Shown here one piece after another: positions 2,420-45,993 of a stretch of 64,000 nt of DNA. The stretch comes from Octopus sinensis. Lineage: Eukaryota. Within the stretch, counting starts at the first letter, position 1. The number at the start of each line of letters is the position of its first letter. The notes under the pieces were generated by a model. The model was not told the origin of the DNA and did not search any database. It saw nothing but the letters and a program-made list of their open reading frames with translations. The position numbers and the translations under genes were made by a program. Location of the stretch: the NCBI RefSeq assembly GCF_006345805.1, contig NC_043025.1, positions 11,284,001 to 11,348,000 on the forward strand. The letters run 5' to 3'.

Positions 2420-3091
2420 TCAAACTTTCCAGAAGAATTTCCGCAAAGACTTCCGAAAGTAACTCTCCTTCTTCGGCGCCAACACGCGGTCGAGGGCGAC
2501 CTGGAACACGTCGTCGACGCCTTCGCCCGTCACCGAAGAGCACTCGACGTAGCCCGCCGCGCCGTGGCGCTTGGACCACTTCGACGCCTTCCGCTTTGAC
2601 ACGAACGCCGTCGACGAAGGACCGGAACCGTCCATCCACGAGAAACGACGACGGGCGGATCGTAAATAATGAGAATGGTAACCATGGTGAGAATTACGGT
2701 GATGAAAATGATGAGCGGAGGGATGAGGAAACTGTGGCACCTCAGAAGCATCATCAATATTGTTCTTGTTGTTGCAGTCTTCCTCCTCATCATCGTCATG
2801 ACGATGCTGATGGAGATGGTTGTGATGCTGTCTGTTTTTGGTGTTGTTGTTGTTATTGTTGTTGTTGTGTTTGTTGTTGTTGCTGGTTCTGGGAGTTTCG
2901 TTCTGGAGTTTCTCTCGGAGGTCCAAGTGAGTACCGACCAGCATAAAGGGAGTGTTCGGACGGTACTCCTTCAGTTCGGTCATCCACCGAGTGCTGAGGT
3001 TCTCGAATGACGTCGGATTGACCAACGAGAAGCAGACGATGAACAGGTCGGTGTCGTAGTAGGCCAGCGTCCGGAGTCGGTCGTAGGTAAC
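2420..3091 (-). CDS. Terminal coding exon of an atypical Rho-family small GTPase (5' exons not seen)
   Basis: Acceptor tttgtccag|GTT at 3092/3091 (phase 0) gives [60 protein letters not shown]...[25 protein letters not shown], matching the Rho/Rac/Cdc42 switch II, G4 (GTxLD) and G5 (ECSA) regions. 672 bp = 223 aa + TGA. Confidence 0.9.
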
Positions 3092-3203
3092 CTGGACAAA
3101 AAATATATAAAAAAAAATATATTATAACAAAAGTTTATGAAAGTAAAAAGAAAATTACACACAGCTTGCTTACGAACCACATGGTCCGGGTTCAGTGTGG
3201 AGG

Positions 3204-3303
3204 NNNNNNNNNNNNNNNNNNNNNNNNNNNNNNNNNNNNNNNNNNNNNNNNNNNNNNNNNNNNNNNNNNNNNNNNNNNNNNNNNNNNNNNNNNNNNNNNN
3301 NNN
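3204..3303. other. Assembly gap (100 N, probably unknown true size)
   Basis: Run of exactly 100 N. Confidence 0.99.
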
Positions 3304-3402
3304 AACCCTTTTTCACTAAAGCGCAACTGGAGAATATGTCTGATTATGAGAAAAGACACCTTCAAAATTTGCGTCGGAATTATGAAGCTATGTTAATGCT
3401 TG
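3304..3402 (+). CDS. PRDM9: PRDM9-like exon: ancestral KRAB domain (5' end lost in the gap)
   Basis: PFFTKAQLENMSDYEKRHLQNLRRNYEAMLML-G aligns with the human PRDM9 KRAB ([32 protein letters not shown], from memory). Donor G|gtaatt at 3402/3403, phase 1. Confidence 0.85.
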
Positions 3403-5455
3403 GTAATTACACTTTTGCTGTATCATTGTTGTGTTTTCTCTCTCTTTTTCATTAGGATCCAATTTACTTCAGATTGTTAGAAACTGAATATTTAACCCTC
3501 TTTTATTTTAGTACACATTGTGTTATGTCCAGTTTCAAACTTTAATATCATAAACAAACTAAATTGTATGATATAAGTTGAGAATAGGCGCAGGAGTGGC
3601 TGTGTGGTAAGTAGCTTGCTTACCAACCACATGGTTCCGGGTTCAGTCCCATTGCGTGGCATCTTGGGCAAGTGTCTTCTGCTATAGCCTCAGGCTGACC
3701 AAAGCCTTGTGAGTGGATTTGGTAGACGGAAACTAAAAGAAGCCCATCGTATATATGTATATATATATGTGTGTGTGTATATGTTTGTGTGTCTGTGTTT
3801 GTCCCCCTAGCATTGCTTGACAACCGATGCTGGTGTGTTTACGTCCCCGTCACTTAGCAGTTCGGGAAAAGAGACCGATAGAATAAGTACTGGGCTTACA
3901 AAGAATAAGTCCCGAAGTCGAGTTGCTCGACTAAAAGATTTATTTTTTGTAAGCCTAGTACTTATTCTATCGGTCTCTTTTTCCGAACCGCTAAGTTACG
4001 GGGACGTAGACACACCAGCATCAATGGTGGGAGAACAAACACATACATACACACACACATATATACACATTTATATATATATGTATATATATTTATATAT
4101 TTATACGACAGACTTCTTCCAGTTTACGTCTACCAAATCCACTCACAAGGCTTTGCTCGGCCCGAGGCTATAGTAGAATACACTTGCCCAAGGTGTGACG
4201 CAGTGGGACTGAACCCGGAACCATGTGGTAAGCAAGCTACTTAGCACACAGCCACTCCTGCGCCTATATTGAGGGTCTGCAAGGTGTCCAAACTATAATT
4301 GATGTATTACTGGTGTGATCAGGCTAGTCATAGAAGTGACCCATTGCAGCCAAAAAACCCAGTAAGCTTGTAGCTGCCCCATCAGGCAAGTAGAGTGCTC
4401 CTCATGAATTTCCTGGTTTTCATTTAAACGATTTTCTTAAATTTCTTTGTCAGGTTTACGTCCCATTAAACCAAATTTTATGGAGTCAAAAAGACATCAA
4501 TTAAAAAAGAATCAAGAAACTGTAAACCATGATGACGATGACGATGATGTTGAATGGCTCCCAAGTTACAAAAAGAAAAGACAGCGACCAGGTATTCAGT
4601 TACTCTTTTACTTGTTTCAGTCATTTGACTGCGGCCATGCTGGAGCACCGCCTTTAATCGAGCAACCTGACCCCGGGACTTATTCTTTTTTGCAAGCCCA
4701 GTACTTATTCTATCGGATCTCTTTTGACAAATGGCTAAGTTTCGGGGACATAAACACACCAGCATCGGTTGTCAAGCAATGCTAGGGGGACAAATACACA
4801 CATGCATATATATATATATATATATATACATATATACGATGGGCTTCTTTCAGTTTCCGTCTACCAAATCCACTCACAAGGTTTTGGTCGGCCCGAGGCT
4901 ATAGTAGAATACACTTGCCCAAGGTGCCACGCAGTGGGACTGTACCCGGAAGCATGCGGTTGGTAAACAAGCTACTTGCCACACAGCCATTCCTAGTGGG
5001 ACTGAACCCGGAACCATGTGGTTGGTGAACATGCTACTTACCCACACAGCCACTTCTAGTGGGACTGAACCCGGAACCATGTGGTTGGTGAACAAGCTAC
5101 TTACCACACAGCCACTCGTGAACTTTAAATGAAATTCATCCATTTCAGAGTTCTTACAATATTTTTCAGTCATATTTTCTCATTCTTAGCATTCTACACA
5201 GAATCACATTACAATGATAAAGCATGCTTTCTTCATCCTCTCTCATTAAGTATTCTATTCCTACTTCAAAGACCTCCATATTTCTGAACTTCTTAAATAC
5301 ATACGAACTCCACCTAATACACTGAATTCTTCTCCCCTCATCACTTTTACTGAGTGTATTACTTAAGCCTTAAATTAACTACTTGCTCCTATCCTTTTCT
5401 GCTCAGTGTTACCCTCTAAAATCTCCTCTTTGCTGATTATGTTTAACCTGTAAAG

Positions 5456-5528
5456 GTCTACATACATTCAACGTGAACAGTTTACAATATTGGTCTCACC
5501 AGTCTCGGAGAGCCTACGAAAGCAATAG
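5456..5528 (+). CDS. PRDM9: PRDM9-like linker exon (predicted)
   Basis: taaag|GT...AG|gtatag, 73 bp, phase 1 to 2, open frame GLHTFNVNSLQYWSHQSRRAYESN. Supported only by splice signals and phase continuity. Confidence 0.55.
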
Positions 5529-5732
5529 GTATAGCACTTTTCTCCATTGTAGACTATAAAAATCATTGTTGATGACAATATGCCTGTTATTATCACTAAG
5601 TTATATATTTTATCATGTTATCCTGAAATCATAATTGTTTACTGTTTAATTTACTATTTACATCATATTTTCTTTAATTTCACATAAAAAAATATGCTTT
5701 CATATAATATATAATATTCTTCCAGTTTTCAG

Positions 5733-5784
5733 ATTACCAATTGCGCGTTCAGTACCCAATAGACCAAAACAAATAGTAAAAACT
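5733..5784 (+). CDS. PRDM9: PRDM9-like linker exon (predicted)
   Basis: ttttcag|A...ACT|gtaagt, 52 bp, phase 2 to 0, RLPIARSVPNRPKQIVKT. Confidence 0.6.
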
Positions 5785-5819
5785 GTAAGTTAACTGACTA
5801 TTTTATTAATTACAAATCA

Positions 5820-5860
<41 letters not shown>

Positions 5861-7151
5861 TATAAGTAATTTTAGAGACAGAACCACCATCAACTCAATC
5901 AACACTGAAAGGTTTTATACCCACCACTCCATAATATTTTGAAAATTAAATCTTGTACTAACTATATCTATTCTGAATCCTGTATTTTCTGTTTATAAGA
6001 CTACACGTGGAGGCGCAGTGGCCCAGTGGTTAGGGCAGCGGACTCGCAGTCGTAGGATCGCAGTTTCGATTCCCAGACTGGGCATTGTGAGTGTTTATTA
6101 AGTGAAAACACCTAAAGCTCCACGAGGCTCCGGCGGGATGTAGAGGTGAACTCTGCTGTACTCTTTCACCACAACTTTCTCTTACTCTTTCTTCCTGTTT
6201 CTGTTGTACCTGTATTTCAAAGGGTCAGCCTTGTCACACTCTGTGTCGCACTGAATTTCCCCGAGAACTACATTAAGGGTACACGTGTCTGTGGAGTGCT
6301 CAGCCACTTGCACATTAATAAATGAGCTGTGACGTCACTGGTGCCAAGCTGTTTCGGCCCCTTTGCCTTTCCCTTAGATAACATCGGTGGTGCAGAGAGG
6401 GGAAGCTGGTATGCATGGGCGACTGCTGGTCTTCCATAAACAACCTTGCCCAGACTTGTGCCTCAGAGGGTAACTTTCTAGGGGCAATCCCTTCAAATCC
6501 TGCTGAGATTAACTTTAGATTTTTGTCCTTTCAATGTCGATGAAGTACCAGTCAAGTACTGCATTTGATGATATTCAGTATTCAGCCCCACTATCCACCT
6601 TCAAAATTACTGACCCTGTGTCTAAATGAAAAGAAATTTTCTTTTTTCTTCTAAAATAAAGATTTTCAAAGCTGGTTAAACAATATTCTACTTGAAAAAA
6701 TATTCTAAATCAATCATAAATAGCTGTCCTCTTTCCTCTCTCTCTCTCTCTCTCTAATATATATATATAATATATATATATATATATGTGGAGGCACAAT
6801 GGCCCAGTGGTTAGGTCAGCGCATTCGCGGTCGTAGGGTCGCGGTTTCAATTCCCAGACCGGGTGTTGTGAGTGCTTATTGAGCGAAAACTCCTAAAGCT
6901 CCATTAGGCTCTGGCAGGGGATGGTGGTGATCCCTGCTGTACTCTTTCACCACAACTTTATCTCACTCTTTCTTTTGTTGGCCTGCTCACTTAGCCAGCG
7001 GGGTGGCATCATTTGAAGGCTAAAACAATGCGAAGCGCATTGTGACCAGTGATGTGTAGCAACATCTGATAGCCTGGTCGGTCAAGGTGATATATATATA
7101 TATATATATACATATATATGTATATATATACACACATATATATATATATAT

Positions 7152-7182
<31 letters not shown>

Positions 7183-7186
7183 ATAT

Positions 7187-7303
7187 ATTAGAGGGAAACC
7201 ACCATGTGGACACCCATATACTAGAAATAGATCCACTATGGTCTCAACACCAAGCAGATCTATTTCTAGCATATGGGTGTCCACATGGTGGTTTCCCTCT
7301 AAT
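7187..7303. repeat. Hairpin, 47-bp arms, 23-nt loop
   Basis: 7187-7233 versus 7257-7303, one mismatch. Confidence 0.9.
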
Positions 7304-7545
7304 ATGTATATAATACAGTTTTACTGAACCTTCAGTTTTTTTTTATGCTAGACCACTTGTGTGAAATCGATGTTAATTAAATTAATATCTAATTTCTCAC
7401 CCTTATTTTAAATTTATGTCTATATATATATACATACATATATATACATATATATACACATCCAACCTCTCTAGTTGCCCTTGTCATTATAATCAATTTC
7501 ATTGTCCTTTATCTGCTTTAGTATCATCAATTAACTTTTATCTAG

Positions 7546-7654
7546 ATTAAACCAGAAAAAACTAAAGTAAGTAACATCATGTTTCCTATGAAATTAAGGA
7601 AAAGACCTGAAAATTCCACTTCTTTAGAAGTACCATCTGACGATAGCTTTATTT
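7546..7654 (+). CDS. PRDM9: PRDM9-like exon: SSXRD motif
   Basis: ttttatctag|ATT...T|gtaagt, 109 bp. IKPEKTKVSNIMFPMKLRKRPENSTSLEVPSDDSFI resembles [23 protein letters not shown]. Confidence 0.85.
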
Positions 7655-7999
7655 GTAAGTATAATGGTTTGTTTTGTGATGATTTTCATGAAAGTGTTTG
7701 TTATTTAAGCAGACATCCACACATTGCTCTGTTTGTGTGGGTAGTGAATTGAACTTACAGCCCAGCCCCCAAACATTACAAACTAGAAGCAGTGATGTTG
7801 GCAACTGATATATTGGTATGAATATGAATTGACATTGAGCTTTGATTTGGCTTTCTGCCTACAATTTGAACATTACATGTTAGGTGATTGTGTTGTTATA
7901 CTGAACTATGGAATTTCTTTACAGTTGAGAGACCAGTATAAGAATTAAGTGATGTAAACCATGGATTCTTAACTCTGAGCTTTTTTGATAGCTATCTAT

Positions 8000-8420
8000 C
8001 TATCTATCTATCCGCTCAGTCGAAGTTGACTCTCGGTCACTCGATGGATTAGTGTCCTCCAGTCAGTTCTTTCCTGGGCCGCTTCTTTCAGATTGGCTAT
8101 GTCCATTCCGGTATCCCTCTTGATGGTGTCAAGCCAGCGGGTTCTTGGTCGGCCTCTTCCTCTCTTGCCACTGACCATTCCGAGCATGATGTCCTTCTCC
8201 AGGGATTTTCTCCGCATAATATGACTGAAATATGCCAATCTATGCTTGGTGATCCTAGCTTCTAGCGACATTTTCAGCATGATCAGGTAAAGAACTTCTC
8301 CATTGGGGAGCCTCGCTGTCCATGGAATCCGTAAAAGTCTTCTCCAACACCAAAGCTCGAATGCATTAATTCTTTTCTGGTCAGCTTTCTTTAGTGTCCA
8401 GATCTCGCATCCATATGTTT
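8000..8420 (-). mobile_element. RTE-clade LINE 3' fragment
   Basis: YGCEIWTL...AFELWCWRRLLRIPWTAR...KRGRGRPRTRWLD followed by a (GATA)n tail. Confidence 0.88.
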
Positions 8421-8938
8421 GATAGCAGAATGTAAAAATATTAATAGAAGCTGTAGTTTGATTATACAACATAAACTATATACAGTATGAGTGATAGGAG
8501 TAAAAAAGTTGTGATTCAGAGTAGCTCTTAGATTTGAAGAGCCACATATGAACATTTAAGCAAATATATTTATTTCTATATCCATCTGTTTCATGTGATC
8601 TTTCATAGAATTGAAAATCATTAGACATACACATATAACTGTAATGGAGATAAAACTACTTCAGTTTAACTAATGGAAAACATTGGCTGTAGACTTAGCC
8701 ATTGTGGGATAGTGTAGAGCAAGGTTACACATTTAGCAGTATAATTAGCCAGAAAATATCTAACAACAGGGATTTAAAACTGAGATGCTCTGCCAGCAAT
8801 TAATACAAGAATCTCGCTTTACAGTGCTACAATAAAGCATTCTATGAATTTACTAGAATATTAAAATATATTCACTCCGGGATAACGTAGTAAAACAATG
8901 TAATTGTTTTAAATTTATTTCTTGCTGACTTTCATTAG

Positions 8939-9015
8939 ATTGTGAAGACTGCAATGAAGAGTATACTGGCGACTGTCCTAATCATGGCCCACTCCTTGTG
9001 GTTTCAGATAATAAG
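8939..9015 (+). CDS. PRDM9: PRDM9-like exon: pre-SET zinc knuckle (C-x2-C-x7-C-x2-H)
   Basis: ttcattag|AT...AAG|gtaaac, 77 bp, (Y)CEDCNEEYTGDCPNHGPLLVVSDNK. Confidence 0.9.
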
Positions 9016-9189
9016 GTAAACATTCCTGACCATTATAACTATATACACTTTCATGATGGTTTGTTTAATAATATATTCCAATATAGATTAAGGAACAAAA
9101 GTGTTTATGCATTTGTATTTCATGATTGTTAGAAACAAAATATAATCTAGCTTTGTTACTCGAGTGATTGAACACATCTTTTATTAAAT

Positions 9190-9610
9190 AAAGTTCGTGT
9201 TCGTTGTCAGCCTCGGCTGGCCCCCGTGCCGGTGACACGTAAAAGCACCATCCGTTCGTGTTCGTGGCTGTTTGCCAGCTCTATCTGGCCCCGTGTCGGT
9301 GGCACGTAAAAGCACCATCCGTTCGTGGCCGTTGCCAGCATCGCCTGGCCCCGTGCCGGTGACACGTAAAAGCACCATCCGTTCGTGGCCGTTCGCCAGC
9401 TCTGTCTGGCACCTGTGCAGGTGGCACGTAAAAAGCACCCACTACACTCGCGGAGTGGTTGGCGTTAGGAAGGGCATCCAGCCGTAGAAACACTGCCAGA
9501 TCTGACTGGGCCTGACGAAGCCTTCCAGCTTCACAGACCCCAGTTGACCCGTCCAACCCATGCTAGCATGGAAAGCGGACGCTAAATGATGATGATGATG
9601 ATGATGATGA
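9190..9610 (+). mobile_element. Non-autonomous retroelement family D with RTE-like tail and internal ~55-bp minisatellite
   Basis: GGTTGGCGTTAGGAAGGGCATCCAGC...GCATGGAAAGCGGACGCTAAA(TGA)n. Minus copies near 15545, 45335, 46570, 47220, 51365 and 63650; plus copy at 24285. Confidence 0.75.
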
Positions 9611-10576
9611 AAGTTTAGTTTATAATTATCTTTGAATGATATAAATCGTATCTGTGGTAAAAAGTGTGTTTCCCAACCACATGGTTCCAGGTTCAGTCTC
9701 ACTGCTTGGCACTTTGGGTAAGTTTTTATTCTGGTATAGCTGTGGGCTGAACAAAGCTTGTGAGCAGATTTGATAGACAGAAACTAGAAAAAGTCTGTCG
9801 TTCGTGTGTATAAATGTTGCTGACTCATTGCTTTGACATCACATAATAATTATAACTGGGTGTCACGGCAATGTAAGCAGTATCCTTTATTTCCACTCTT
9901 CCTTGGAAAATACGTCTGATTATGGAGATAGGAAACTTGAAAACAGGTGAGGGTTGGTGATAAGAAAGTTATTTACCCATAGAAAATCTGCCTCAACAAC
10001 AAATTTCATCTGACCCATGCAACATGGAAAAAAAAAATGTTTAACGATGACCATAGATGCTTCTTATAATTAGTCTGGTAATATAAATTTCCAACCATTT
10101 ATAGCAAGACTTTAAAGAAGACGAAATATGTTGCCAGGTGTTGTTTTGGCCGATAAGAGATAATACAAATAGTCTGTTCAGAGTGGCTGTGTGGTAAGTA
10201 GCTTGCTTACCAAGCACATGGTTCGAGGTTCAGTCCCACTGCGAGGCACCTTGTGACTTCTACTATAGCCTCGAGCCGACCAAGTGGATTTGGTAGACGG
10301 AAACTGAAAGAAGCCCGTCGTATATATGTATGTGTGTGTGTTTGTCCCCCCCAACATCGCTTGACAACCGATGCGGGTGTGTTTACGTCCACGTGACTTA
10401 GTGTTTCGGCAAAAAAAAAAACGGTAGAATAAGTACTAGGCTTACAAAGTCCTGGGGTCGATTTGCTCGACTAAAGGCGGTGCTCCAGCATGGCCGCAGT
10501 CAGACTGAAACAAGTAAAAGAGTATAGAATTTATTAGAGTTGGAGTCAATTATCAATTATTTTTCTTTGCATTTAG

Positions 10577-10771
10577 GTTGCTAAAGGATCTCCGAATCGA
10601 GCCAAATTAACTGCTCCACCTTGTGTGTCTATCACAAAATCAAAAATCCCAGGAGCTGGTCTTGGAGCTATTGCACTTGTTACAATTCATGCTAGAAGCA
10701 GGTTCGGCCCTTATGAAGGAAAAGTTATCGATGATCAGGATGAAGCTCATATTTCTGGTTACAGTTGGCAG
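10577..10771 (+). CDS. PRDM9: PRDM9-like exon: PR/SET N-half
   Basis: atttag|GTT...CAG|gtactg, 195 bp. VAKGSPNRAKLTAPPCVSITKSKIPGAGLGAIALVTIHARSRFGPYEGKVIDDQDEAHISGYSWQ contains the Y276-equivalent in GYSW. Confidence 0.93.
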
Positions 10772-10921
10772 GTACTGTGTTAAAAACAATGGAATATACT
10801 TAACATGTTTTAATATCTATGAAATATTGTTAATGTATTAGCTATAGCAATATTAAATTATTAACTTATAGTATAGCCTAGAAACTGAAAGAAGCCTGTT
10901 GTGTGTGAATATGTATGTATA

Positions 10922-11308
10922 TCTCTCTATATATAAACGGCAGTTTGTCTGTGCGTGTTTCTGTGCGTCTGTTTTCTTGTACCCTCACTCTGACCACGGC
11001 TTTCAACCGATTCTGATGAAACTTGACACACACATAGCCCAATGTCATAATTCAAAACTAACGCAGCGAAAATTTTGAAAAGTTCCCCCAGTTCTGAAAA
11101 AAATCGATAAATTCGACATGGGGTCGAGAATCAAAAAAAACAAACCACAGACTGTCTAGGGGACGCAACTCAACCTTTTTTTACTCTCAAAAAAAAATTT
11201 ACCATCATTTTTTTTCCATTTTTTTGCTATTTTTTGGCTATAACTCTCTAAAAATGCTTTATAGTTATTTCCCTTACAAACCTGAGCAACGCCGGGCGAT
11301 ACTGCTAG
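10922..11308 (+). mobile_element. Non-autonomous Helitron
   Basis: 5' TC...TATATAAA start and 3' GAGCAACGCCGGGCGATACTG-CTAG|T end. No TSD. Confidence 0.8.
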
Positions 11309-11320
11309 TATGTATATATA

Positions 11321-11491
11321 GGCACAGGAGTGGCTGTGTGGTAAGTAACTTGCTAACCAACTATATGGTTCCGTTTTCAGTCTCACTGCGTGGCATCTTG
11401 AGCAAGTGTCTTCTGCTATAGCCCCGGGCCGACCAATACCTTGTGAGTGGATTTGGTAGACGGAAACTGAAAGAAGCCTGTCGTATATATG

Positions 11492-11524
<33 letters not shown>

Positions 11525-11725
11525 TTGTGTGCCTATGTTTGTCCCCCTAGCATTGCTTGACAACCGATGCTGGTGTGTTTACGTCCCCGTCACTTAGTGG
11601 TTAGGCAAAAGAGACAGATAGAATAAGTACTGGGCTTACAAAGAATAAGTCCCGGGGTCGATTTTCTCGACTAAAGGCGGTGCTCCAGCATGGCCGCAGT
11701 CAAATGACTGAAACAAGTAAAAGAG
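11321..11725 (+). mobile_element. tRNA-derived SINE family A (representative)
   Basis: A-box TGGCTGTGTGG, B-box GGTTCAGTCCC, internal (TA)n(TG)n, 3' CCAGCATGGCCGCAGTCAAATGACTGAAACAAGTAAAAGAG. Other copies or fragments near 3586, 4000-5110, 10180, 15010, 19814, 26418, 35990, 42958, 43710, 44440, 47717-48587, 52105, 53900, 54415, 60065-60790, 62658 and 63925. Confidence 0.9.
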
Positions 11726-11729
11726 TATA

Positions 11730-11760
<31 letters not shown>

Positions 11761-11869
11761 TCGCTCTCCTATGCTGCATGCAGTCTCTCAAATATAGGTA
11801 GTTGTCATGTTTCTGCACCATCCCTCAGTATATTGTAAGCTATACACTACATTCCTAACCTTCCAGTTA

Positions 11870-12752
11870 GCCTGTGGGTTCATCTTACATACAACACAAT
11901 TGTACTCTGTACAGGGAGACTTATCAAAGGGATAGGTATTGCAGATCAGAGATTTTAAAGGGGCAGTTATGTTTTTGGAAAATTCTGGATGTGATTCTAT
12001 TGTATTATGATCTCTTAACCCCTGAAGTGACAGCTCAGCTGGGATTGCTGAATCACTAAGTACTGGTTGGTGAAGGAAAATAGAATTATAGTCTTTGCAT
12101 GACATAAACACTAACTTAACCACCGGCTTTATATAGCTATGATAAGACCTCACCTGGAATTTGCATCACCGGTCTGGAACCCCTATCTTGCCCAGGATAT
12201 CAATTGTCTGGAAGCCGTTCAGCAACGTGCAACCAAAAGAATACCCTCCATCAGGCATTTGCCATATTCTGAACGCCTTACTTCCCTGGGCATGGACACA
12301 TTGAAACTCCAACGTTTGGCAGCTGACTTGACAGACACCAATGAAATTATCAACCATCGTACAAACAATAACTCTGAGCACCTTTTCAAACTCCACCCAT
12401 CTAACACATGTGGACATATTTACAAAGTCAGAAAACAGCACAGCTCCCATGACTCTTGGAAACATTTTTTCACGCTGAGAGTTGCTGAAGCATGGAACAA
12501 ACTGCCGGCATCAGTTATTAGTTGTCGGAGCACTGCATCCTTCAAAACTTCCATGCTTTCTGAGATTCGCCAACACTACACCTTATTTTCTCCCCTCCAT
12601 ACACACACAAGCATGTATCTGACTCATGCATTGTTCGCTTTCCAGACATTTGTACATTACTGCATATGCTTTATACGCACTTTTGACAAGTTGTGGGGCA
12701 CCTGAGCACTGTATACAATAAATTCATTATTATTATTATTATTATTATTATA
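11870..12752 (+). mobile_element. CR1-like LINE 3' fragment
   Basis: RPHLEFASPVWNPY...LEAVQQRATK...YSERL...FFTLRVAEAWNKLP followed by an (ATT)n tail. Confidence 0.88.
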
Positions 12753-12840
12753 ATATCAGTCTACTCTTTCTTCTATGACTATTAAAAGTCATTGTTTCTC
12801 TCATTTTTCACAATATTTTCTCATAAATATTTATATACAG

Positions 12841-13135
12841 ATTAATACTTATGGAAAATCTACCTATTTTGTTGATGCAATGAATGTGACAATTTCTAAT
12901 TGGATGCGATATGTAAACTGTGCAAGGACCGAAGAGGAACAGAATTTAAATGCTTTTCAGTACAATGGTAATATTTACTATAGAACATTAAGAAACATTG
13001 TTCCTGGTGAAGAATTACTTGTTTGGTATGGAGAAGAATATGCCAAAGATCTTGGTATCTCACACTGTGAACAACTGAAAGCAAAGACTGTGTCCACTGT
13101 TGGAGCACAGTTATCAGAAACAATCAGTTCTGCAG
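12841..13135 (+). CDS. PRDM9: PRDM9-like exon: PR/SET C-half
   Basis: tatacag|ATT...G|gtaaaa, 295 bp. SNWMRYVNCARTEEEQNLNAFQYNGNIYYRTLRNIVPGEELLVWYGEEYAKDLG contains the Y341 and Y357 equivalents. Confidence 0.95.
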
Positions 13136-13164: not shown

Positions 13165-13355
13165 TACAGTTTGTTCTCTCTCTCGCTCTTTCCCTACCTC
13201 TCCCTCTCTCTCTGTGACTTTCTCTCTCCCCCTCTCTCTCTTTGACTCTGACTCTCTCTCTCTCTCTGACTCTCCCTCTCTCTCTCTGACTTTCTCCCCC
13301 CTCTCTCTCTGACTCTCTCTCTCCCTCCCTCTCTCTCCCTCTCTCTCTTGCTCTC

Positions 13356-13415
<60 letters not shown>

Positions 13416-13437
13416 CGACTCTGACTCTCTCTCTCCA
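13165..13437. repeat. (CT)n-rich polypyrimidine tract
   Basis: Directly after the SET C-half exon donor. Confidence 0.95.
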
Positions 13438-14050: not shown

Positions 14051-14275
14051 CTCCTGCAATGCTTGCATAATATTCTGAAAATGTTTTGGCAGTTCCATGA
14101 GCTGGATATGAGAGTACTGCGGCTGGGGAAGATAATGAGTACCAAGTCCATGATAACGAAACTACTAATTTAGATGGTCCAGTCATACGAAAGCAGGTGC
14201 TGAATGGTGAGATGAGGTGAGGAAAACATCTCCAGTGCAACCTCTGGAAACATCTGAAAGACAACCTTAAAAATA

Positions 14276-14492
14276 CCCTAACACTAACACTAACCCTAAC
14301 CTTTAACCCTTAACCCTTAACCCTAACCCTAACCCTTAACCCTAACCCTTAACCCTTAAACCTAACCCTTAACCCTAACCCTTAACCCTAACCCTTAACC
14401 CTAACCCTTAACCCTAACCCTTAACCCTAACCCTTAACCCTAACCCTTAACCCTAACCCTTACCCTTAACCAAACCCTAACCTTAACCCTAA
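14276..14492. repeat. Interstitial telomere-like tract (CCCTAA/CCCTTAA)n
   Basis: ~215 bp of alternating CCCTAA and CCCTTAA units inside a PRDM9-like intron. Confidence 0.9.
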
Positions 14493-16512: not shown

Positions 16513-18398
16513 ATAAATGTCATTCTTCAAATTCACGGATTGATACATTTCCTGACAGTACCAAAATGCTTGAAGGCTTGGAACAACATAGAATTAATTT
16601 GTCACCAGAAAATAATAAAATACAAACACAGTCTATTAAGAGTGACACAAACTGTATAAGGGATCATTTATTGAATTGTAGTAATGTGAATTCCAAAGAG
16701 AAACCATTTCGATGTGAGGACTTTGGAAAGACATTCTCTGACTCTACTATATTCAAAGAACACAAGGAAATGAATTCTGGAGAGAAAGCATTGCAGAGTA
16801 AGGGTTTCGGAAAGAAATTTTCTGACTCTAGTATATTCAAAGAACACAAGGAAATGAATTCTGGAGAGAAAGCATTCCAGAGTAAGGATTTCGGGAAGAA
16901 ATCTTCTGACTGTAGTATATTCAAAGAACACAAGGAAATGCAACCTGGAGAAAAAGCATTCCAGAGTAAGGATTTCGGGAAGAAATTCACTGAATCTAGT
17001 GACTTAGGTAAACAAGTGAGAACAAACAACGGAGGGAAACGATTTCACTGTAAAAACTGTGGGAAATCGTTTTATCAGTCTGCTAACTTAACAATGCATG
17101 AAAGAACACACACTGGAGAGAAACCATTTCACTGTAAAATATGTGCGAAATCGTTTGCTGTTTCTTGTAACTTAACAAACCATGAAAGAACACACACAGG
17201 AGAGAAACCATTTCGTTGTAAAAACTGTGGGAAGGCGTTCTCTCGTTCTAGTGTCTTAACAAACCATGAAAGAACACATACAGGAGAGAAACCATTTCAT
17301 TGTAAAAACTGTGGGAAGGCGTTCTCTCGTTCTAGTGTCTTAACAAACCATGAAAGAACACATACAGGAGAGAAACCATTTCATTGTAAAAACTGTGGGA
17401 AGGCGTTCTCTCGTTCTAGTGTCTTAACAAACCATGAAAGAACACATACAGGAGAGAAACCATTTCATTGTAAAACATGTGGGAAGGCGTTTTATCAGTC
17501 TGCTAACTTAACAATGCATGAAAGAACACACACTGGAGAGAAACCATTTCACTGTAAAACATGTGGGAAGGCGTTTTATCAGTCTGCTAACTTAACAATG
17601 CATGAAAGAACACACACTGGAGAGAAACCATTTCACTGTAAAACATGTGGGAAGGTGTTTGCTCAATCTCGTGATTTAAAAAGACACGAACGCATTCATA
17701 CAGGAGAGAAACCATTTCACTGTAAAACATGTGGGAAATCGTTTTCTTGGACTTCTATCTTAAAAACACACGAACGCGTTCATACTGGAGAGAAACCATT
17801 TCACTGTAAAACATGTGGGAAATCGTTTTCTCGGACTTCTATCTTAAAAACACACGAACGCGTTCATACTGGAGAGAAACCATTTCATTGTAAAATATGT
17901 GGGAAGGCGTTTGCTGACTCTGCTAACTTAAAAACACACGAACGCATTCATACAGGAGAGAAACCATTTCACTGTAAAACATGTGGGAAGGCATTTGCTG
18001 ACTCTGCTAACTTAAAAACACACGAACGCATTCATACAGGAGAGAAACCATTTCACTGTAAAACATGTGGGAAATCGTTTTCTCGGACTTCTATCTTAAA
18101 AACACACGAACGCGTTCATACTGGAGAGAAACCATTTCACTGTAAAACATGTGGGAAATCGTTTTCTCGGACTTCTATCTTAAAAACACACGAACGCGTT
18201 CATACAGGAGAGAAACCATTTCACTGTAAAACATGTGGGAAATCGTTTTCTCGGACTTCTATCTTAAAAACACACGAACGCGTTCATACTGGAGAGAAAC
18301 CATTTCATTGTAAAATATGTGGGAAGGCGTTTGCTGACTCTGCTAACTTAAAAACACACGAAAGAAGACACATAGAGGATGAGAAACGATTGCAATGA
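16513..18398 (+). CDS. PRDM9: PRDM9-like terminal exon: 4 degenerate + 16 intact C2H2 zinc fingers
   Basis: ttatatttacag|AT (phase 1). 84-bp units: degenerate 16707-17042, intact 17043-18398 with TGEKP linkers. The visible exons sum to 2784 bp (927 aa + stop) in one frame from 3306. Confidence 0.93.
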
Positions 18399-18505: not shown

Positions 18506-19103
18506 CACTTACCACCCCACAACCCTACCTCTCCAACGCACCATTCTTCGAGCTTTCCGACATCTCCAGTCCGACCCGTCCACTTCACACCTCTTCCCTA
18601 ACCGACCCCTCCCCTCCTTCAAACGAGCCCATAACCTACGAGACCTCTTGGTCCACAGCTCCTTCCCTGACCCTACCTCCCAACCTGGCTCGTTCCCCTG
18701 CTCCCGCCCACATTGCCGCACTTGCCCTTACCTCTTCAACACCACCCTCCTCACCGGCACCCATCATCGACCCTATCGCATCATCAACTCCTTCACCTGC
18801 ACCTCCAGCAATATCATCTATTGCATCTCCTGCTCTCTCTGCCATTCCCTGTACATCGGACAAACGGGACGCCGCTTGGCTGACCGGTTCGCGGAACACC
18901 TCCGTGACATCCGCCTTGCCAATGACACACTGGTCTCACGCCATTTCCGCTCCACCGGTCACTCCTTGCAACACCTGTCTGTGTTTGGATTGTCCTTGCA
19001 CAGAAGCCATCCGGATTCCCGTTTGCGCCGTGAACAGGAATTAATCTTCTCTCTTCGCTCTTTCACGCCATTTGGTCTCAACTCTCCCCCCCTTCTCATC
19101 TAA
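18506..19103 (+). mobile_element. Penelope-like element fragment (GIY-YIG endonuclease)
   Basis: TYHPTTLPLQRTILRAFRHL...FKRAHNLRDLLVHSS...PCSRPHCRTC...IYCISCSLCHSLYIGQTGRRLADRFAEH...RLRREQELIFSLRSFTPFGLN. A probable pLTR-like piece lies at 19520-19790. Confidence 0.9.
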
Positions 19104-38717: not shown

Positions 38718-40802
38718 TCATTCATATTCATCATACGGGTCGTCGTATTCCGGGTATCCCTCTTGGCTGCCGTGCCCCAACAGTTGAGCTGCGCTCATGT
38801 GCTCCATCTCTTCCTCTTCTTCCTCCTCCTCCTCCTCTTCTGCCGTTGTCGCTGCATACTGGACCGGTCCGCTCTCGTACTGCACGGGGCCCGTCTCCAC
38901 CACGACGTTGTCTTCCTCGACGCTGCCCTTGCCCGTGTCCGCATTCGTGACCTGAGACAAAATCTTGACCTTTTTGCCCCTTGGCGGACCGACTGGGCCA
39001 GCATCGACCTCCGAATGACTCCTTAGATCACCGTTGCTGCTGATCAGGCTTCCGGGCCGTTTCAACCGCAGTGACGTTATGCTGTCGTTCTTGGTCAAGA
39101 CGGCTGGTGAGGCCGATACTGGAGAGGCAGGGGTCTGTTTGTCGATCGGCTGACATAAGTCCTTCAGAACTTCATAATTAATTTTACTGGATATTTTTTT
39201 CTCCTGTAACATTGTCCGAATTGCTTCCCCCGCTGTGCTTGCTTGGACGTGGGACTTCCGTTTGTAGGTTTTCTTCTTTTTCTTCTCCGGTTTCGATGCC
39301 GCTTCTTCTTTCTCCTTTGCCTCGTGGGCTTCCTTCAGTTTCTGCTCCATCAAATAGTCTGCGTTTGCCTCCATCCAGATCTTCGTCTTGATGCGGACTT
39401 CATTCTCGTTCAGCAGAAATCTCTCCAACTCTTCATCATCGATGTCGGTCAAATCCAACTCACCGTCACCGTCAGTCGCGTCCTCAAAGTCTTCCGTGAG
39501 ACATTCTGCCACACAATCTCGAATACCAAGACTTGCAGCTGTTGGGGCAGGGCCTTTGAAGTCAGGGAGCACAAGTTGGCATAACTTATCCTCAACGTTT
39601 TTCGTCATAGCATCTTGACTCCCGCTGTCTTCTAGCTCCCTCGGCATCTCATTTTCCGATTCAAACATGGCCTTCTTTTCCGGACAGATGGACTCCTGTA
39701 TTTCTGAGCAGAGATCATTTAGACTGTCGTTAATTTCGGAGGCGATGCTGTCAGCGTCATCACATACTTTCGAATAGGAAGCAAAAATGCCCCTCGGTTT
39801 CCGTGCTTCAAGAGCTTTTTCAATTTCCTTCTGGATGTTAGTAACTTCGAAAGTTAATTCATTCAACTTACATTTGTCGTCCAGCTTGTTTTGCTCCACT
39901 TTCCGCTTTTTGCTGCCGGCACTGAAGGACGGTGGGTCCATTTCCTGCTCAAGGTCGATCTTAGAGAATTCCTCGATGGTCAGCTGACTAGAAGGGGTCA
40001 CTTCGAACTCGTTTAGTCGTTTCCGGATAGTCGATTCACAAACCTTTACTACATGTATCAGGTTTTTCACCGTTCGATTAAAGCCATAAATCCGACAGGC
40101 AACCAAAAGGGCCGCACCACACAGACCCGATGGTCGTCGCCCAGTATGCATCCAGTCTCTCTTCATTCGCTGCACCAGACGTAACGCCGTCATAGACACG
40201 TCGTGCTCCTTGTCCCCCAACTGGAGTTTGTGTGCGAAACGTGCAATGTAAAGACAGGGATCAATGGCAGGGGCCACAATACATAACTCACGTGCCAGCT
40301 GGTTGTAGACTTTGCCCAGGACATACACGTTGGTCTGCAGGACGTCGCTGAAGTCGAGCAACATGTGTGGCGTACCCTCTGTCCGACACACCAAATACAA
40401 ACACGCTGCGATAACGTGTAGCGATTTCCGTCCGCGTGTCAGCCTCTTCACCACTGCCATCTTGAAGAAGTTCACGGCTGTGTCCATGCAGTGTTGGTTC
40501 ATGTGGAGCTGTGCACCCAATTGCTGGATTTTGCGTCGGCCGTTTTCCAAAGTGATCGCCCTCGACTCCTTGCCGACTCCCACGTGGAAATTTCCTCCCA
40601 TGGAGTGGCTGCGGGACTCGTCGGAAGACACAAACTGCCCGATGATGCTGGAACCTCCCCCGGCATGTTCGGCGAACTGGACTTCGGAGACGATGATCTG
40701 ATCGTCCAGCACAGAACCACATTTCGTACACACGGCATCGCCTCGGGCCGGATCGTAGTCGATCTCGCTACAACCACAATGAGAACAAACTGCATTCGGC
40801 AT
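38718..40802 (-). CDS. BRF1: Transcription factor IIIB 90 kDa subunit BRF1, single coding exon
   Basis: 694-aa uninterrupted ORF: N-terminal Zn ribbon (CSHCG...CTKCG), two cyclin folds (GRRPSGLCGAALLVA) and C-terminal BRF1 homology blocks (DGELDLTDIDDEEL; ASTAGEAIRTMLQEKKISSKINYEVL). Confidence 0.96.
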   Translation of the reverse strand: MPNAVCSHCGCSEIDYDPARGDAVCTKCGSVLDDQIIVSEVQFAEHAGGGSSIIGQFVSSDESRSHSMGGNFHVGVGKESRAITLENGRRKIQQLGAQLHMNQHCMDTAVNFFKMAVVKRLTRGRKSLHVIAACLYLVCRTEGTPHMLLDFSDVLQTNVYVLGKVYNQLARELCIVAPAIDPCLYIARFAHKLQLGDKEHDVSMTALRLVQRMKRDWMHTGRRPSGLCGAALLVACRIYGFNRTVKNLIHVVKVCESTIRKRLNEFEVTPSSQLTIEEFSKIDLEQEMDPPSFSAGSKKRKVEQNKLDDKCKLNELTFEVTNIQKEIEKALEARKPRGIFASYSKVCDDADSIASEINDSLNDLCSEIQESICPEKKAMFESENEMPRELEDSGSQDAMTKNVEDKLCQLVLPDFKGPAPTAASLGIRDCVAECLTEDFEDATDGDGELDLTDIDDEELERFLLNENEVRIKTKIWMEANADYLMEQKLKEAHEAKEKEEAASKPEKKKKKTYKRKSHVQASTAGEAIRTMLQEKKISSKINYEVLKDLCQPIDKQTPASPVSASPAVLTKNDSITSLRLKRPGSLISSNGDLRSHSEVDAGPVGPPRGKKVKILSQVTNADTGKGSVEEDNVVVETGPVQYESGPVQYAATTAEEEEEEEEEEEMEHMSAAQLLGHGSQEGYPEYDDPYDEYE

Positions 40803-41986: not shown

Positions 41987-42194
41987 TATATGTATGTAAA
42001 TACACATAGATGAATGGGATTAGACCAGGAAGAACACGTAAAAATTGTTGGTGGTCGCTGTTGTCGATAGTAAATTAGTTCATTGAAAAAAATTGGATAA
42101 ATTTAATAAACTTTACTATAGCATCAAACCCTTCGCCATTTCTTCTGGGACTGACAAAAAGATTGAGAAGTTGGGTGTTGATAATCGTTATACC

Positions 42195-42938
42195 ATGGCA
42201 GAAAGGACCAAACGTTCGATTAAACCGAAGCAATTTCACGGAGAGGTGTTGAGCTATTCTGTCAATATCCGACGCAATATGGAATCGGAAAATAGCAAGC
42301 GTGTGGTGAAGAGAAAACACTTTTTTGACGAGCTTTACCAAGGTTTTAGCCCAACAGCTGCAGCGAAATCTTCGCCTTTGTTCTCTTCGTCACAGCAGAA
42401 AAGGCATAAGGGGAACACCTGTTCGGATTATCGAGGGTCGAAGACGAAGAACGAGGATGACAAACCAGATAATAACAACAGCAGCAAGAAATCAAAAGCG
42501 TCCAAAACCTCTGAATACTCCAACATCAGGAACGACGAAAAATCGAACCCCCAAAATCGAATCTATGAAAGGCTCCAGAATTTACAGCTGCAGAAATCTC
42601 CGGCCGTGCCTGACATGGACCCGGCTTTCTTCCTTCGTTGTCATTCCGATAGTAACCGACCCGATGACGACGGTAACAAGGTTTGGATGTGTCGGTTCGA
42701 ACCTCGGCTGAAGGATCCTGCTCGCTCCGGTCGGAGCGGCCAATTGATCGCCTCGTGTGGCGGCAAAATCATCTGTCTCGTGGACTCTGGCTCCGGCCGA
42801 GTGATGATGCGATACAAGGACAGTGACAAAGATGAGAATTTCTATGCCATGGCCTGGACAACCTTGGAGATCGCCGGCGACAAAAACAGGGACCCACAAC
42901 TCACCAACATACTCGCTGTAGCCGGGGAAGGACGACGG
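42195..42938 (+). CDS. LRWD1: LRWD1/ORCA-like WD40 protein, coding exon 1
   Basis: From accATGg at 42195: a basic/Ser-rich N-terminus, then FFLRCHSDSN...VWMCRFEP...IASCGGKIICLVD...ENFYAMAWT...LAVAGEG, matching LRWD1 HFLQCHSKNN...LWACAFEP...VATCGGEAVCVID. Donor CGG|gtaaga. The start codon is uncertain. Confidence 0.85.

Positions 42939-45959: not shown

Positions 45960-45993
<34 letters not shown>

What the first reader, a model, noticed from the sequence alone, without database searches (positions are those of the whole stretch)
17043..18398. Zinc-finger array looks like a fast-evolving PRDM9 minisatellite
Seen: 16 units of 84 bp with near-identical backbones. Residues at helix -1/2/3/6 read QANM, VCNN, RSVN x3, QANM x2, QRDR, WSIT, RSIT, DANT x2, RSIT x3, DANT. 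Fingers 9 and 10 differ by a single base (TGG versus CGG), exactly at position -1. There are two homogenised blocks: fingers 1-7 (LT[M/N]HERT) and 8-16 (LK[R/T]HER[I/V/R]). Established: DNA-level homogeneity with diversity focused on contact residues is the signature used to infer hotspot-directing PRDM9. Inference: the array is under concerted evolution with turnover of binding specificity.
Basis: partly seen in the sequence, partly recalled or inferred. Interest (0 to 1): 0.75.

Follow-up and report, generated by a model that had tools for sequence, protein, structure and literature searches.

The report
Octopus PRDM9 zinc-finger array
The repeat is the DNA-binding finger array of the octopus counterpart of PRDM9, the gene that places meiotic recombination hotspots in mammals. 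The rest of the gene lies upstream in the window, and no protein for it was found in the databases searched. The fingers have been duplicated and replaced since octopus species diverged.

Summary

Six upstream exons on the same strand (3306-13135) splice in phase onto the finger exon. They encode an ancestral-type KRAB region, an SSXRD-like stretch, the PR zinc knuckle and a complete PR/SET domain. The closest solved structures to that domain are mouse and human PRDM9, and all three catalytic tyrosines are kept.

The window is Octopus sinensis CM016887.1:11284001-11348000. No protein for this gene was found in the databases. The O. bimaculoides orthologue is misnamed "zinc finger protein 391, partial".

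- **Array dynamics:** the array behaves like a coding minisatellite. Some units are identical, and exact repeats of 156-176 nt cross unit borders.
- **Concerted evolution:** each finger is nearer to other O. sinensis fingers than to any assembled O. bimaculoides finger.
- **Selection:** contact codons change about 2.6 times faster than synonymous sites.
- **Overstatement:** "near-identical backbones" is too strong. Only 39% of amino-acid diversity sits at -1/2/3/6, the low end of the full-length PRDM9 range.

A role in placing hotspots is inferred, not shown. This is a new member of a known kind.

The parts
3205..3303 (.). Assembly gap of 99 N. It cuts off the 5' end of the KRAB-related exon and hides the start codon.
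   Evidence: Sequence read. Molluscan relatives carry about 25-70 residues before the FFTKAQL motif.
3306..3402 (+). Exon with the KRAB-related (ancestral-type KRAB) region, incomplete at its 5' end: PFFTKAQLENMSDYEKRHLQNLRRNYEAMLMLG. GT donor follows.
   Evidence: tblastn with scallop, abalone and oyster PRDM9-like proteins, E down to 1e-7. BLASTP to the KRAB region of a deer PRDM9-like protein, E 5e-11. The Pfam KRAB model is not hit.
4454..4591 (+). Exon continuing the N-terminal region: LRPIKPNFMESKRH...DDDDDDVEWLPSYKKKRQRP. AG acceptor and GT donor, phase 1 to phase 1.
   Evidence: It aligns to the conserved LP.IKP.FM ... D.DEEW.P stretch of mollusc and vertebrate PRDM9.
7556..7654 (+). 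Exon with the SSXRD-like stretch: MFPMKLRKRPENSTSLEVPSDDSFI.
   Evidence: Position, phase and motif match the Y[PS]LR.R...Y.E..P.DDD.LYCE pattern in the alignment. The Pfam SSXRD model is not hit at E<=10.
8939..9015 (+). Exon with the PR zinc knuckle: YCEDCNEEYTGDCPNHGPLLVVSDNK.
   Evidence: Pfam PF18445, E 5.6e-6, 26.5 bits against a cut-off of 25.8. tblastn hits.
10577..10771 (+). Exon with the N-terminal half of the PR/SET domain, including GPYEG (equivalent of human Tyr276).
   Evidence: 83% amino-acid identity to O. bimaculoides P0022.
12841..13135 (+). Exon with the C-terminal half of the PR/SET domain: NWMRYVNCAR...IYYRT...LLVWYGEEY (equivalents of human Tyr341 and Tyr357).
   Evidence: Pfam PF21549 on this exon alone, E 1.9e-30. 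Spliced domain matches positions 2-122 of 123, E 6.5e-43. Best solved structures are PRDM9 4c1q, 6nm4 and 4ijd.
16513..16706 (+). Start of the last exon: a unique linker. The AG acceptor completes the codon G|AT.
   Evidence: 86% nt identity to O. bimaculoides. P0022 has the same junction.
16707..17042 (+). Four degenerate 84-bp finger relics without the Cys/His ligands. Units 2 and 3 are O. sinensis-specific duplicates.
   Evidence: TRF 16697-17000, period 84, 88% matches. Translation. One-to-one orthology of relic 1 and relic 4 with O. bimaculoides units, 83% and 81%.
17043..18386 (+). Sixteen tandem C2H2 fingers of 84 bp each: the finding itself.
18387..18398 (+). Three tail codons (RLQ) and the TGA stop codon.

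Best explanation
The array is the DNA-binding domain, encoded in the last exon, of the Octopus sinensis orthologue of PRDM9.

Shown:
- The gene has the full-length layout: a KRAB-related region, an SSXRD-like stretch, a PR zinc knuckle, a PR/SET methyltransferase domain with the three catalytic tyrosines, and then a long tandem finger array.
- The array evolves as a coding minisatellite. Whole fingers and multi-finger blocks are duplicated or converted, so copies stay identical within the species while one-to-one correspondence with another octopus species is lost.
- The four base-contacting residues change faster than silent sites, while the rest of each finger is under purifying selection.

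Inferred from vertebrate PRDM9, with a probability of about 0.4-0.5:
- In meiotic prophase the fingers bind a sequence motif.
- The PR/SET domain trimethylates H3K4 and H3K36 on neighbouring nucleosomes.
- The N-terminal KRAB/SSXRD part recruits the break machinery, so the array decides where recombination starts.
- Erosion of its own target motifs by biased repair then favours new finger combinations, which would explain the turnover.
For: Architecture:
- Seven exons on the + strand have GT-AG borders and consistent phases, and give one open frame of 928 codons.
- PR/SET: Pfam PF21549, E 6.5e-43, over the whole model.
- Solved structures: PRDM9 at 174-180 bits, against PRDM11 at 125 and PRDM12 at 91. 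The alignment keeps GPYEG, IYYRT and LVWYG.
- Zinc knuckle: PF18445 above its cut-off.
- The N-terminus aligns to the KRAB region of a mammalian PRDM9, E 5e-11, and to mollusc, amphioxus and vertebrate PRDM9 in a multiple alignment.
- Named database relatives are mostly 'PRDM9-like', including oyster, abalone, scallop and snail proteins.
- The O. bimaculoides model P0022 carries the same SET-to-finger splice.

Minisatellite behaviour:
- Units 4=5 and 10=13=15 are identical.
- Exact repeats of 176 and 156 nt cross unit borders.
- Relic copy number is 4 in O. sinensis against 2 orthologous relics in O. bimaculoides.

Concerted evolution:
- Every O. sinensis finger is 82-89% identical to other finger types of its own array, but only 65-80% identical to the best O. 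bimaculoides finger.
- Flanking unique coding DNA is 86-90% identical between the species.

Selection:
- Non-contact codons have pS 0.31 and pN 0.10, giving omega 0.26.
- Contact codons have pN 0.57, about 2.6 times the silent rate.
- Four random positions out of 28 reach the observed contact diversity in 0.05% of draws.
- The contact share of 0.39 lies inside the range of complete vertebrate PRDM9 (0.33-1.0). In those genomes values of 0.33-0.41 rank 4th to 12th among 227-313 finger genes. Slow-evolving SET-only PRDM9-beta genes have 0.16-0.19 (PMC5519329).

Not a cluster member:
- The window holds no other tandem finger array.
Against: - **Contact share:** at 0.39 it is low for PRDM9. Other molluscan PRDM9-like arrays reach 0.60-0.90. 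In my non-octopus control set, 20% of ordinary finger genes reach 0.39.
- **Age of finger types:** types differ at silent sites (pS 0.31), so homogenisation across the whole array is incomplete.
- **N-terminal domains:** the Pfam KRAB and SSXRD models are not hit. The spacer between them is much shorter than in other species. The lone proximal finger that follows the SET domain in oyster, abalone and vertebrate proteins is not seen.
- **Missing 5' end:** the start codon and the first part of the KRAB region are lost in an assembly gap.
- **Missing data:** there is no expression, polymorphism or recombination data. The only species comparison uses a truncated O. bimaculoides scaffold with a gap inside its array.
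Confidence: 0.8

Rival explanations
1. It is a true PRDM9 orthologue, but in octopus it no longer (or never did) places recombination hotspots. It would then act as a germline chromatin or transcription regulator. Its array would change only through the ordinary instability of tandem 84-bp repeats plus the usual variability of contact residues.
For: - The contact share of 0.39 is far below other molluscs (0.60-0.90), and 20% of control finger genes reach it.
- Finger types are old enough to differ at silent sites.
- The Pfam KRAB and SSXRD models are not met, and the proximal lone finger is absent.
- Vertebrates show that PRDM9 can persist without a hotspot role (PMC5519329).
Against: - In vertebrates the non-hotspot forms lack KRAB/SSXRD and have contact shares of 0.16-0.31.
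- Here the KRAB-related and SSXRD-like exons are kept in frame, and the catalytic tyrosines are intact.
- Contact codons outrun silent sites.
- Fingers cluster by species.
Confidence: 0.3
2. The array belongs to one of the many lineage-specific C2H2 finger genes of cephalopods, and the PR/SET exons upstream belong to a separate gene.
For: - Coleoid cephalopods have large C2H2 expansions (PMC12513265).
- The O. bimaculoides orthologue is named 'zinc finger protein 391'.
Against: - That same O. bimaculoides model contains the PR/SET domain spliced to the fingers.
- The phases of all seven exons fit.
- The window has no other tandem finger array.
- No database protein shares more than 57% identity with the array.
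Confidence: 0.03
3. The number and order of units are an assembly artefact, produced by collapse or expansion of a repeat. On this reading the identical units say nothing about biology.
For: - Three units are identical over 84 nt, and exact repeats reach 176 nt.
- The O. bimaculoides scaffold breaks inside the same array.
- This assembly has a gap 13 kb upstream in the same gene.
Against: - The frame is open through all 16 units.
- Single-base differences between copies are consistent.
- The array is only 1.3 kb long.
- The identity of the gene and the between-species divergence do not depend on the exact unit count.
Confidence: 0.2
4. The gene is a decaying pseudogene.
For: - No protein for it was found in the databases searched.
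- Four N-terminal finger relics have lost their zinc ligands.
Against: - 928 codons run without a stop or frameshift.
- Omega is 0.26 at non-contact codons.
- All 16 fingers keep C2H2.
- The catalytic tyrosines are kept.
Confidence: 0.05

Closest known systems
Mammalian PRDM9 (human, mouse): the protein that positions meiotic recombination hotspots
   Same: - Same domain order: KRAB-related, SSXRD, zinc knuckle, PR/SET, tandem C2H2 array in one terminal exon.
- About 51% identity over the knuckle and SET region.
- The three catalytic tyrosines are kept.
- 84-bp units with minisatellite-like duplication, and excess change at contact residues.
   Different: - Only 39% of diversity lies at contact residues, against 0.69 in human and 0.91 in mouse.
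- The array is built from six older finger types in two backbone blocks.
- The Pfam KRAB and SSXRD models are not hit.
- The KRAB-SSXRD spacer is short, and no proximal lone finger is present.
- Function is untested.
Prdm9 of the limpet Lottia gigantea and of Capitella and Nematostella (Oliver et al. 2009, PMC2779102)
   Same: Invertebrate orthologues for which concerted evolution among fingers was reported. The Lottia gene is supported by a male-gonad EST.
   Different: This is a cephalopod, and no paper in the library links PRDM9 with octopus or cephalopods in substance. The homogenisation here is patchier.
Predicted 'PRDM9-like' proteins of bivalves and gastropods (Ostrea, Argopecten, Pecten, Haliotis, Pinctada, Biomphalaria)
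   Same: - Closest named full-length relatives.
- Same FFTKAQL...RNYE N-terminus, knuckle and SET domain.
- In the surfclam, PRDM9 is testis-specific and co-expressed with SYCP3, MSH4 and HFM1 (PMC9716669).
   Different: - Their arrays are much more uniform, with non-contact identity of 0.93-0.99 and contact shares of 0.60-0.90.
- The oyster and abalone proteins keep the lone finger after the SET domain.
Full-length cnidarian PRDM9 (bioRxiv 10.64898/2026.09.07.749791)
   Same: The same four-domain criteria were applied outside vertebrates. Contact shares of 0.29-1.0 overlap the octopus value.
   Different: Different phylum. Cnidarians often carry several full-length paralogues. Only one copy is seen here, in one window.
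Teleost PRDM9-beta and other SET+finger partial orthologues
   Same: PR/SET domain plus a finger array.
   Different: They lack KRAB and SSXRD and have contact shares of 0.16-0.19 with no rapid evolution. The octopus gene keeps the N-terminal exons and has twice that share.
Cephalopod-expanded C2H2 finger genes
   Same: Long tandem C2H2 arrays in octopus genomes.
   Different: No PR/SET or KRAB-related exons are described for them. The paper on these expansions does not mention PRDM. This locus is not in a finger-gene cluster.

Membership tests
PRDM9, full-length type (criteria of Baker et al. 2017 and the 2026 cnidarian preprint) | PR/SET domain closer to PRDM9 than to other PRDM proteins | tested here: met
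   Pfam PF21549, E 6.5e-43. Solved structures: PRDM9 at 174-180 bits, against PRDM11 at 125, PRDM12 at 91 and others at or below 78.
PRDM9, full-length type (criteria of Baker et al. 2017 and the 2026 cnidarian preprint) | Three catalytic tyrosines of the SET domain (human Y276, Y341, Y357) | tested here: met
   GPYEG, IYYRT and LVWYG align to the corresponding human and mouse residues. The residue numbering is from my own count of the human sequence.
PRDM9, full-length type (criteria of Baker et al. 2017 and the 2026 cnidarian preprint) | KRAB (ancestral-type) domain at the N-terminus | tested here: inconclusive
   Pfam PF01352 is not hit at E<=10, in the octopus or in scallop P0037. Octopus residues 2-74 do align to residues 36-104 of a deer PRDM9-like protein whose KRAB hit is 30-67, E 5e-11, and to all PRDM9 sequences. 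The first part is lost in the assembly gap.
PRDM9, full-length type (criteria of Baker et al. 2017 and the 2026 cnidarian preprint) | SSXRD motif | tested here: inconclusive
   Pfam PF09514 is not hit at E<=10. A divergent stretch, FPMKLRKRPENSTSLEVPSDDSFIYCEDC, sits at the expected place and exon, directly before the knuckle.
PRDM9, full-length type (criteria of Baker et al. 2017 and the 2026 cnidarian preprint) | Tandem C2H2 array in the terminal exon | tested here: met
   16 canonical 28-residue fingers in one exon.
PRDM9, full-length type (criteria of Baker et al. 2017 and the 2026 cnidarian preprint) | Share of amino-acid diversity at -1/2/3/6 in the top 5% of the species' own C2H2 genes | tested here: inconclusive
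   The share is 0.386 for 16 fingers and 0.427 without the terminal finger. It is 0.51 and 0.47 inside the two blocks. This falls within the full-length range of 0.33-1.0. No set of octopus finger genes could be fetched. Among 119 non-octopus finger genes, 20% reach the octopus value.
PRDM9, full-length type (criteria of Baker et al. 2017 and the 2026 cnidarian preprint) | Concerted evolution of fingers: closer within a species than between species | tested here: met
   Best match within the array to another finger type is 82-89%. Best match to an O. bimaculoides finger is 65-80%. Flanking coding DNA is 86-90% identical. Caveat: the O. bimaculoides array is truncated.
PRDM9, full-length type (criteria of Baker et al. 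2017 and the 2026 cnidarian preprint) | Expression in meiotic germ cells, and binding sites that coincide with H3K4me3 or break hotspots | not testable with these tools
   No octopus expression, ChIP or recombination data are available here.
PRDM9, full-length type (criteria of Baker et al. 2017 and the 2026 cnidarian preprint) | Co-occurrence with ZCWPW1, ZCWPW2 and other partner genes | not tested
   The rest of the octopus genome cannot be searched with these tools.
Coding minisatellite | Head-to-tail units with very similar copies, and duplications that span unit borders | tested here: met
   TRF score 1431. Identical units. Exact repeats of 176, 156, 121 and 109 nt at shifts of 1, 5, 4 and 2 units.
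Coding minisatellite | Length and sequence polymorphism among individuals | not testable with these tools
   Only one assembly of this locus was reachable. The O. vulgaris array lies more than 10 kb from any gene on record.
Cephalopod-expanded C2H2 finger genes | Finger-only protein, usually in clusters of paralogues | tested here: not met
   PR/SET and N-terminal exons are spliced to the array. The window's 64 kb hold no other tandem array.

The most novel reading that the evidence does not exclude
Octopuses place their meiotic recombination hotspots with PRDM9, as mammals do. That would make this the first protostome in which the system could be shown to work. The O. sinensis / O. vulgaris sister pair would then carry different arrays and different hotspot maps, with possible consequences for hybrid fertility.
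Probability: 0.4. Interest if true: 0.8.

Novelty: new member of a known kind. Interest (0 to 1): 0.5.

Why it matters
Whether PRDM9-directed recombination is a vertebrate speciality or an old animal trait is still open. Outside vertebrates the evidence is a handful of sequence surveys (Lottia, Capitella, Nematostella in 2009; cnidarians in 2026).

- **What the locus adds:** a cephalopod with the full domain set, intact catalytic residues and an array that turns over between species.
- **A ready comparison:** two very close species with chromosome-level assemblies, in which array and hotspot turnover could be measured directly.
- **An annotation gap:** no protein for this gene was found for O. 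sinensis, and the O. bimaculoides orthologue is named as an ordinary zinc finger protein. Surveys based on annotation would therefore score cephalopods as lacking PRDM9.

Tried and rejected
1. **Homologue search with the SET exon alone.** It returned only short fragments and missed even the O. bimaculoides orthologue. The word index is patchy, so absence from it is weak evidence.
2. **Homologue search with the array.** It was swamped by vertebrate finger genes. The best identity was 57%, and no octopus protein was listed. It served only as a rough control set.
3. **Exhaustive representative search with P0022.** It was swamped by very long finger proteins. Two of the 150 hits matched best in the SET region. 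One looks vertebrate-like and the other shows no cephalopod-like linker. No cephalopod relative was gained.
4. **Reaching the O. vulgaris array.**
   - The BRF1 look-up gave both assemblies, but no gene is on record within 10 kb on the PRDM9 side.
   - The finger-exon ORF is not on record.
   - The neighbouring Rho-type GTPase gene lacks its first exons in the window, so its product could not be written out.
   - A metagenome scan for a unit-junction 35-mer found nothing.
5. **An octopus-specific background of finger genes.** The supplements of the cephalopod C2H2 paper hold no sequences.
6. **Rejected readings.** These were an ordinary finger-gene cluster member and a pseudogene.
7. **My first splice model.** It joined exon 3306-3402 directly to 7556. 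Homology then revealed an extra exon at 4454-4591 with the same phase.
Full report
**1. The observation**

Tandem Repeats Finder reports one array at 17031-18362, with period 84, 15.9 copies, 90% matches and score 1431. Read in frame from 17043, it gives 16 units of 28 codons. Each unit follows the pattern C-X2-C-X12-H-X3-H and is joined to the next by a TGEKP linker. A short tail and a stop codon at 18396-18398 close the frame.

Units 9 and 10 differ by one base, TGG versus CGG, at the -1 codon. The two backbone blocks, fingers 1-7 and fingers 8-16, are real.

The phrase 'near-identical backbones' is too strong.
- The 16 units fall into six types: QANM, VCNN, RSVN, QRDR, R/WSIT and DANT.
- Copies of one type differ by 0-5 nt. 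Units 4=5 and 10=13=15 are identical.
- Different types differ by 9-26 of 84 nt, so the mean pairwise identity is 81% and the range is 69-100%.
- Eight non-contact positions also vary.

Directly upstream lie four more 84-bp units (16707-17042) that have lost their cysteines and histidines.

**2. What the array belongs to**

An ORF 3.3 kb upstream on the same strand contains NWMRYVNCARTEEEQNL...IYYRT...LLVWYGEEY, which Pfam calls a PR domain (PF21549, E 1.9e-30). I combined stop-to-stop ORFs, splice signals and tblastn with molluscan relatives. Together these give seven exons with GT-AG borders and consistent phases:

| Exon | Content |
|---|---|
| 3306-3402 | KRAB-related region, 5' end missing |
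| 4454-4591 | continuation of the N-terminal region |
| 7556-7654 | SSXRD-like stretch |
| 8939-9015 | PR zinc knuckle |
| 10577-10771 | PR/SET, N-terminal half |
| 12841-13135 | PR/SET, C-terminal half |
| 16513-18398 | linker, finger relics, 16 fingers, stop |

They join into one open frame of 928 codons. The 5' end is cut by a 99-N assembly gap at 3205-3303, so the start codon is missing.

Tests on the spliced N-terminal part:
- **PR/SET domain.** It matches the Pfam PR model over positions 2-122 of 123 (E 6.5e-43).
- **Zinc knuckle.** PF18445 scores above its cut-off.
- **Solved structures.** The best matches are mouse PRDM9 4c1q (180 bits, E 3e-52) and human PRDM9 6nm4 and 4ijd (174 bits). 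PRDM11 follows at 125 bits and PRDM12 at 91.
- **Catalytic residues.** The alignment keeps the equivalents of the three catalytic tyrosines: GPYEG, IYYRT and LVWYG.
- **KRAB and SSXRD.** The Pfam models are not hit, in the octopus or in a scallop 'PRDM9-like' protein.
- **KRAB by alignment.** Octopus residues 2-74 align to the KRAB region of a deer PRDM9-like protein (E 5e-11).
- **Multiple alignment.** With oyster, abalone, scallop, amphioxus, turtle and mammal PRDM9, it shows the shared FF[TS]K..L..M..YEK.R..N..RNYE...G....KP.FM ... D.DEEW.P block. It also shows a divergent SSXRD-like stretch directly before the knuckle.
- **Differences from relatives.** The spacer between the two N-terminal elements is much shorter than in the other species. 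The lone finger that follows the SET domain in oyster, abalone and vertebrate proteins is not seen.

**3. Source and relatives**

A look-up of the BRF1 ORF in the window found two assemblies. The O. sinensis locus is identical to the window over 22,085 nt. The window is therefore O. sinensis CM016887.1:11284001-11348000. O. vulgaris is 93-97% identical in long aligned stretches nearby.

No protein encoded by this gene was found in the protein collection. The closest entry is P0022, 'zinc finger protein 391, partial [Octopus bimaculoides]'. It carries the same SET exons spliced to a finger exon, which independently supports the last two junctions of my model. The other best hits are mostly named PRDM9-like and include many bivalves and gastropods.

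The paper library has no paper that links PRDM9 with octopus or cephalopods in substance. Oliver et al. 2009 reported concerted evolution of Prdm9 fingers in the limpet Lottia, in Capitella and in Nematostella. A 2026 preprint states that PRDM9 outside vertebrates remains poorly explored.

**4. How the array evolves**

*Within the array.* Exact repeats of 176, 156, 121 and 109 nt occur at shifts of 1, 5, 4 and 2 units, and they cross unit borders. Blocks of fingers have therefore been copied recently. Even the first 59 nt of the terminal finger take part. Copies of the RSIT type differ by 0.8 nt per 84 on average. That is less than the 3-7% non-coding divergence between O. sinensis and O. vulgaris. 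I infer that these copies arose or were homogenised after that split.

*Selection between finger types.*
- Non-contact codons have pS 0.31 and pN 0.10, giving omega 0.26, which indicates purifying selection.
- The four contact codons have pN 0.57, about 2.6 times the silent rate.
- This is a crude pooled Nei-Gojobori estimate on non-independent pairs.

*Share of diversity at -1/2/3/6.*
- The share is 0.386 for all 16 fingers and 0.427 without the terminal finger. It is 0.51 and 0.47 within the two blocks.
- Four random positions reach the observed contact diversity in 0.05% of draws.
- Complete vertebrate PRDM9 orthologues span 0.33-1.0. In those genomes values of 0.33-0.41 rank 4th to 12th among 227-313 finger genes. 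SET-only PRDM9-beta genes have 0.16-0.19 (PMC5519329). Cnidarian full-length genes span 0.29-1.0.
- In my own controls, 119 mostly vertebrate finger genes have a median of 0.26, and 20% of them reach the octopus value. Oyster, abalone, scallop, pearl oyster and Biomphalaria PRDM9-like arrays have 0.60-0.90.
- The octopus value is therefore compatible with a full-length PRDM9 but sits at the low end. The proper test, ranking against octopus finger genes, could not be run.

*Between species.*
- The O. bimaculoides scaffold has a 10-N gap inside the array and ends in it.
- Its assembled fingers use a different backbone ([29 protein letters not shown]) and different contact residues.
- Every O. 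sinensis finger is 82-89% identical to other finger types of its own array, but only 65-80% identical to the best O. bimaculoides finger.
- The unique coding DNA on either side is 86-90% identical between the species.
- The degenerate relics keep one-to-one orthology at 81-83%. Two extra copies are specific to O. sinensis.
- This is the pattern expected from concerted evolution and replacement of fingers. The caveat is that part of the O. bimaculoides array is unassembled.

**5. Mechanism**

Shown: this is the finger array of a full-length PRDM9 orthologue. It behaves as a coding minisatellite, with diversifying change at the base-contacting residues.

Inferred from vertebrate PRDM9, with a probability of about 0.4-0.5:
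- The fingers bind a motif in meiotic prophase.
- The PR/SET domain marks neighbouring nucleosomes with H3K4me3 and H3K36me3.
- The N-terminal part recruits the break machinery.
- Erosion of its own motifs selects for new finger combinations.

Indirect support comes from a bivalve, in which PRDM9 is testis-specific and co-expressed with SYCP3, MSH4 and HFM1 (PMC9716669).

The main rival, at about 0.3, is that the gene is retained for another germline role and the array simply drifts as tandem repeats do. Three further readings are unlikely or affect only details:
- an ordinary cephalopod finger gene;
- a pseudogene;
- a pure assembly artefact.

**6. Verdict**

It is a new member of a known kind. 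PRDM9 with concerted finger evolution was already described in a gastropod, and many molluscan proteins carry the name. The cephalopod gene, however, has no protein in the databases searched or is misnamed.

Interest is moderate. The value lies in making PRDM9-directed recombination testable in a protostome with two closely related, well-assembled species. The decisive comparison with O. vulgaris could not be reached with the tools.

Noticed in passing
window 3205-3303: A 99-N assembly gap flanked by a SINE-like sequence. It hides the first exon(s) of PRDM9. It probably also hides those of the head-to-head Rho-type GTPase gene, because the first 60 residues of that GTPase are nowhere in the window.
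   Followed up: partly
window 2420-3094 (-): Last exon of a Rho/Rac-family GTPase (57% identical to Rac1 over residues 61-121). It carries a long Asn/His-rich low-complexity insert inside the GTPase domain.
   Followed up: partly
window 16707-17042 (+): Four finger relics without zinc ligands precede the array. O. bimaculoides has two orthologous relics, so O. sinensis has gained two copies. Unequal exchange therefore also acts on the non-functional units.
   Followed up: yes
window 18648-19103 (+): ORF with a GIY-YIG nuclease motif (YIGQTGRRLADRFAEH), as in Penelope-like retroelements. It starts about 250 nt after the PRDM9 stop codon, probably in the 3' UTR. The Pfam score is just below the cut-off.
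   Followed up: partly
window 14275-14492 and 13175-13435: A telomere-like repeat (ACCCTTAACCCTA)n of 17 copies and a 260-nt (TC)n tract lie in the last intron of PRDM9. That intron is 3.4 kb here but only about 0.56 kb in O. bimaculoides.
   Followed up: no
window 38718-40802 (-): BRF1 (TFIIIB subunit) is encoded as one uninterrupted 694-codon ORF. The protein is identical in O. sinensis and O. vulgaris. An intronless BRF1 is unusual for an animal gene.
   Followed up: partly
window 42093-50881 (+): Exons of an LRWD1-like WD-repeat gene (Pfam PF23215). Isolated LINE-type zinc fingers lie in one of its introns, at 49531-50095.
   Followed up: partly
window 4933-5117, 43935-44291, 47719-48072, 60042-60805 and many others: A repeat of about 180 nt with a tRNA-like core (GGCTGTGTGGTAAG...GGTTCAGTCCCACTG) recurs across the window, often as tandem pairs. 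It is probably a cephalopod SINE.
   Followed up: no
L001 (O. bimaculoides LGKD02035502.1) 12831-13005: The O. bimaculoides orthologue is named 'zinc finger protein 391, partial'. Its scaffold has a 10-N gap inside the finger array and ends within it, so the array is unresolved in that assembly.
   Followed up: yes
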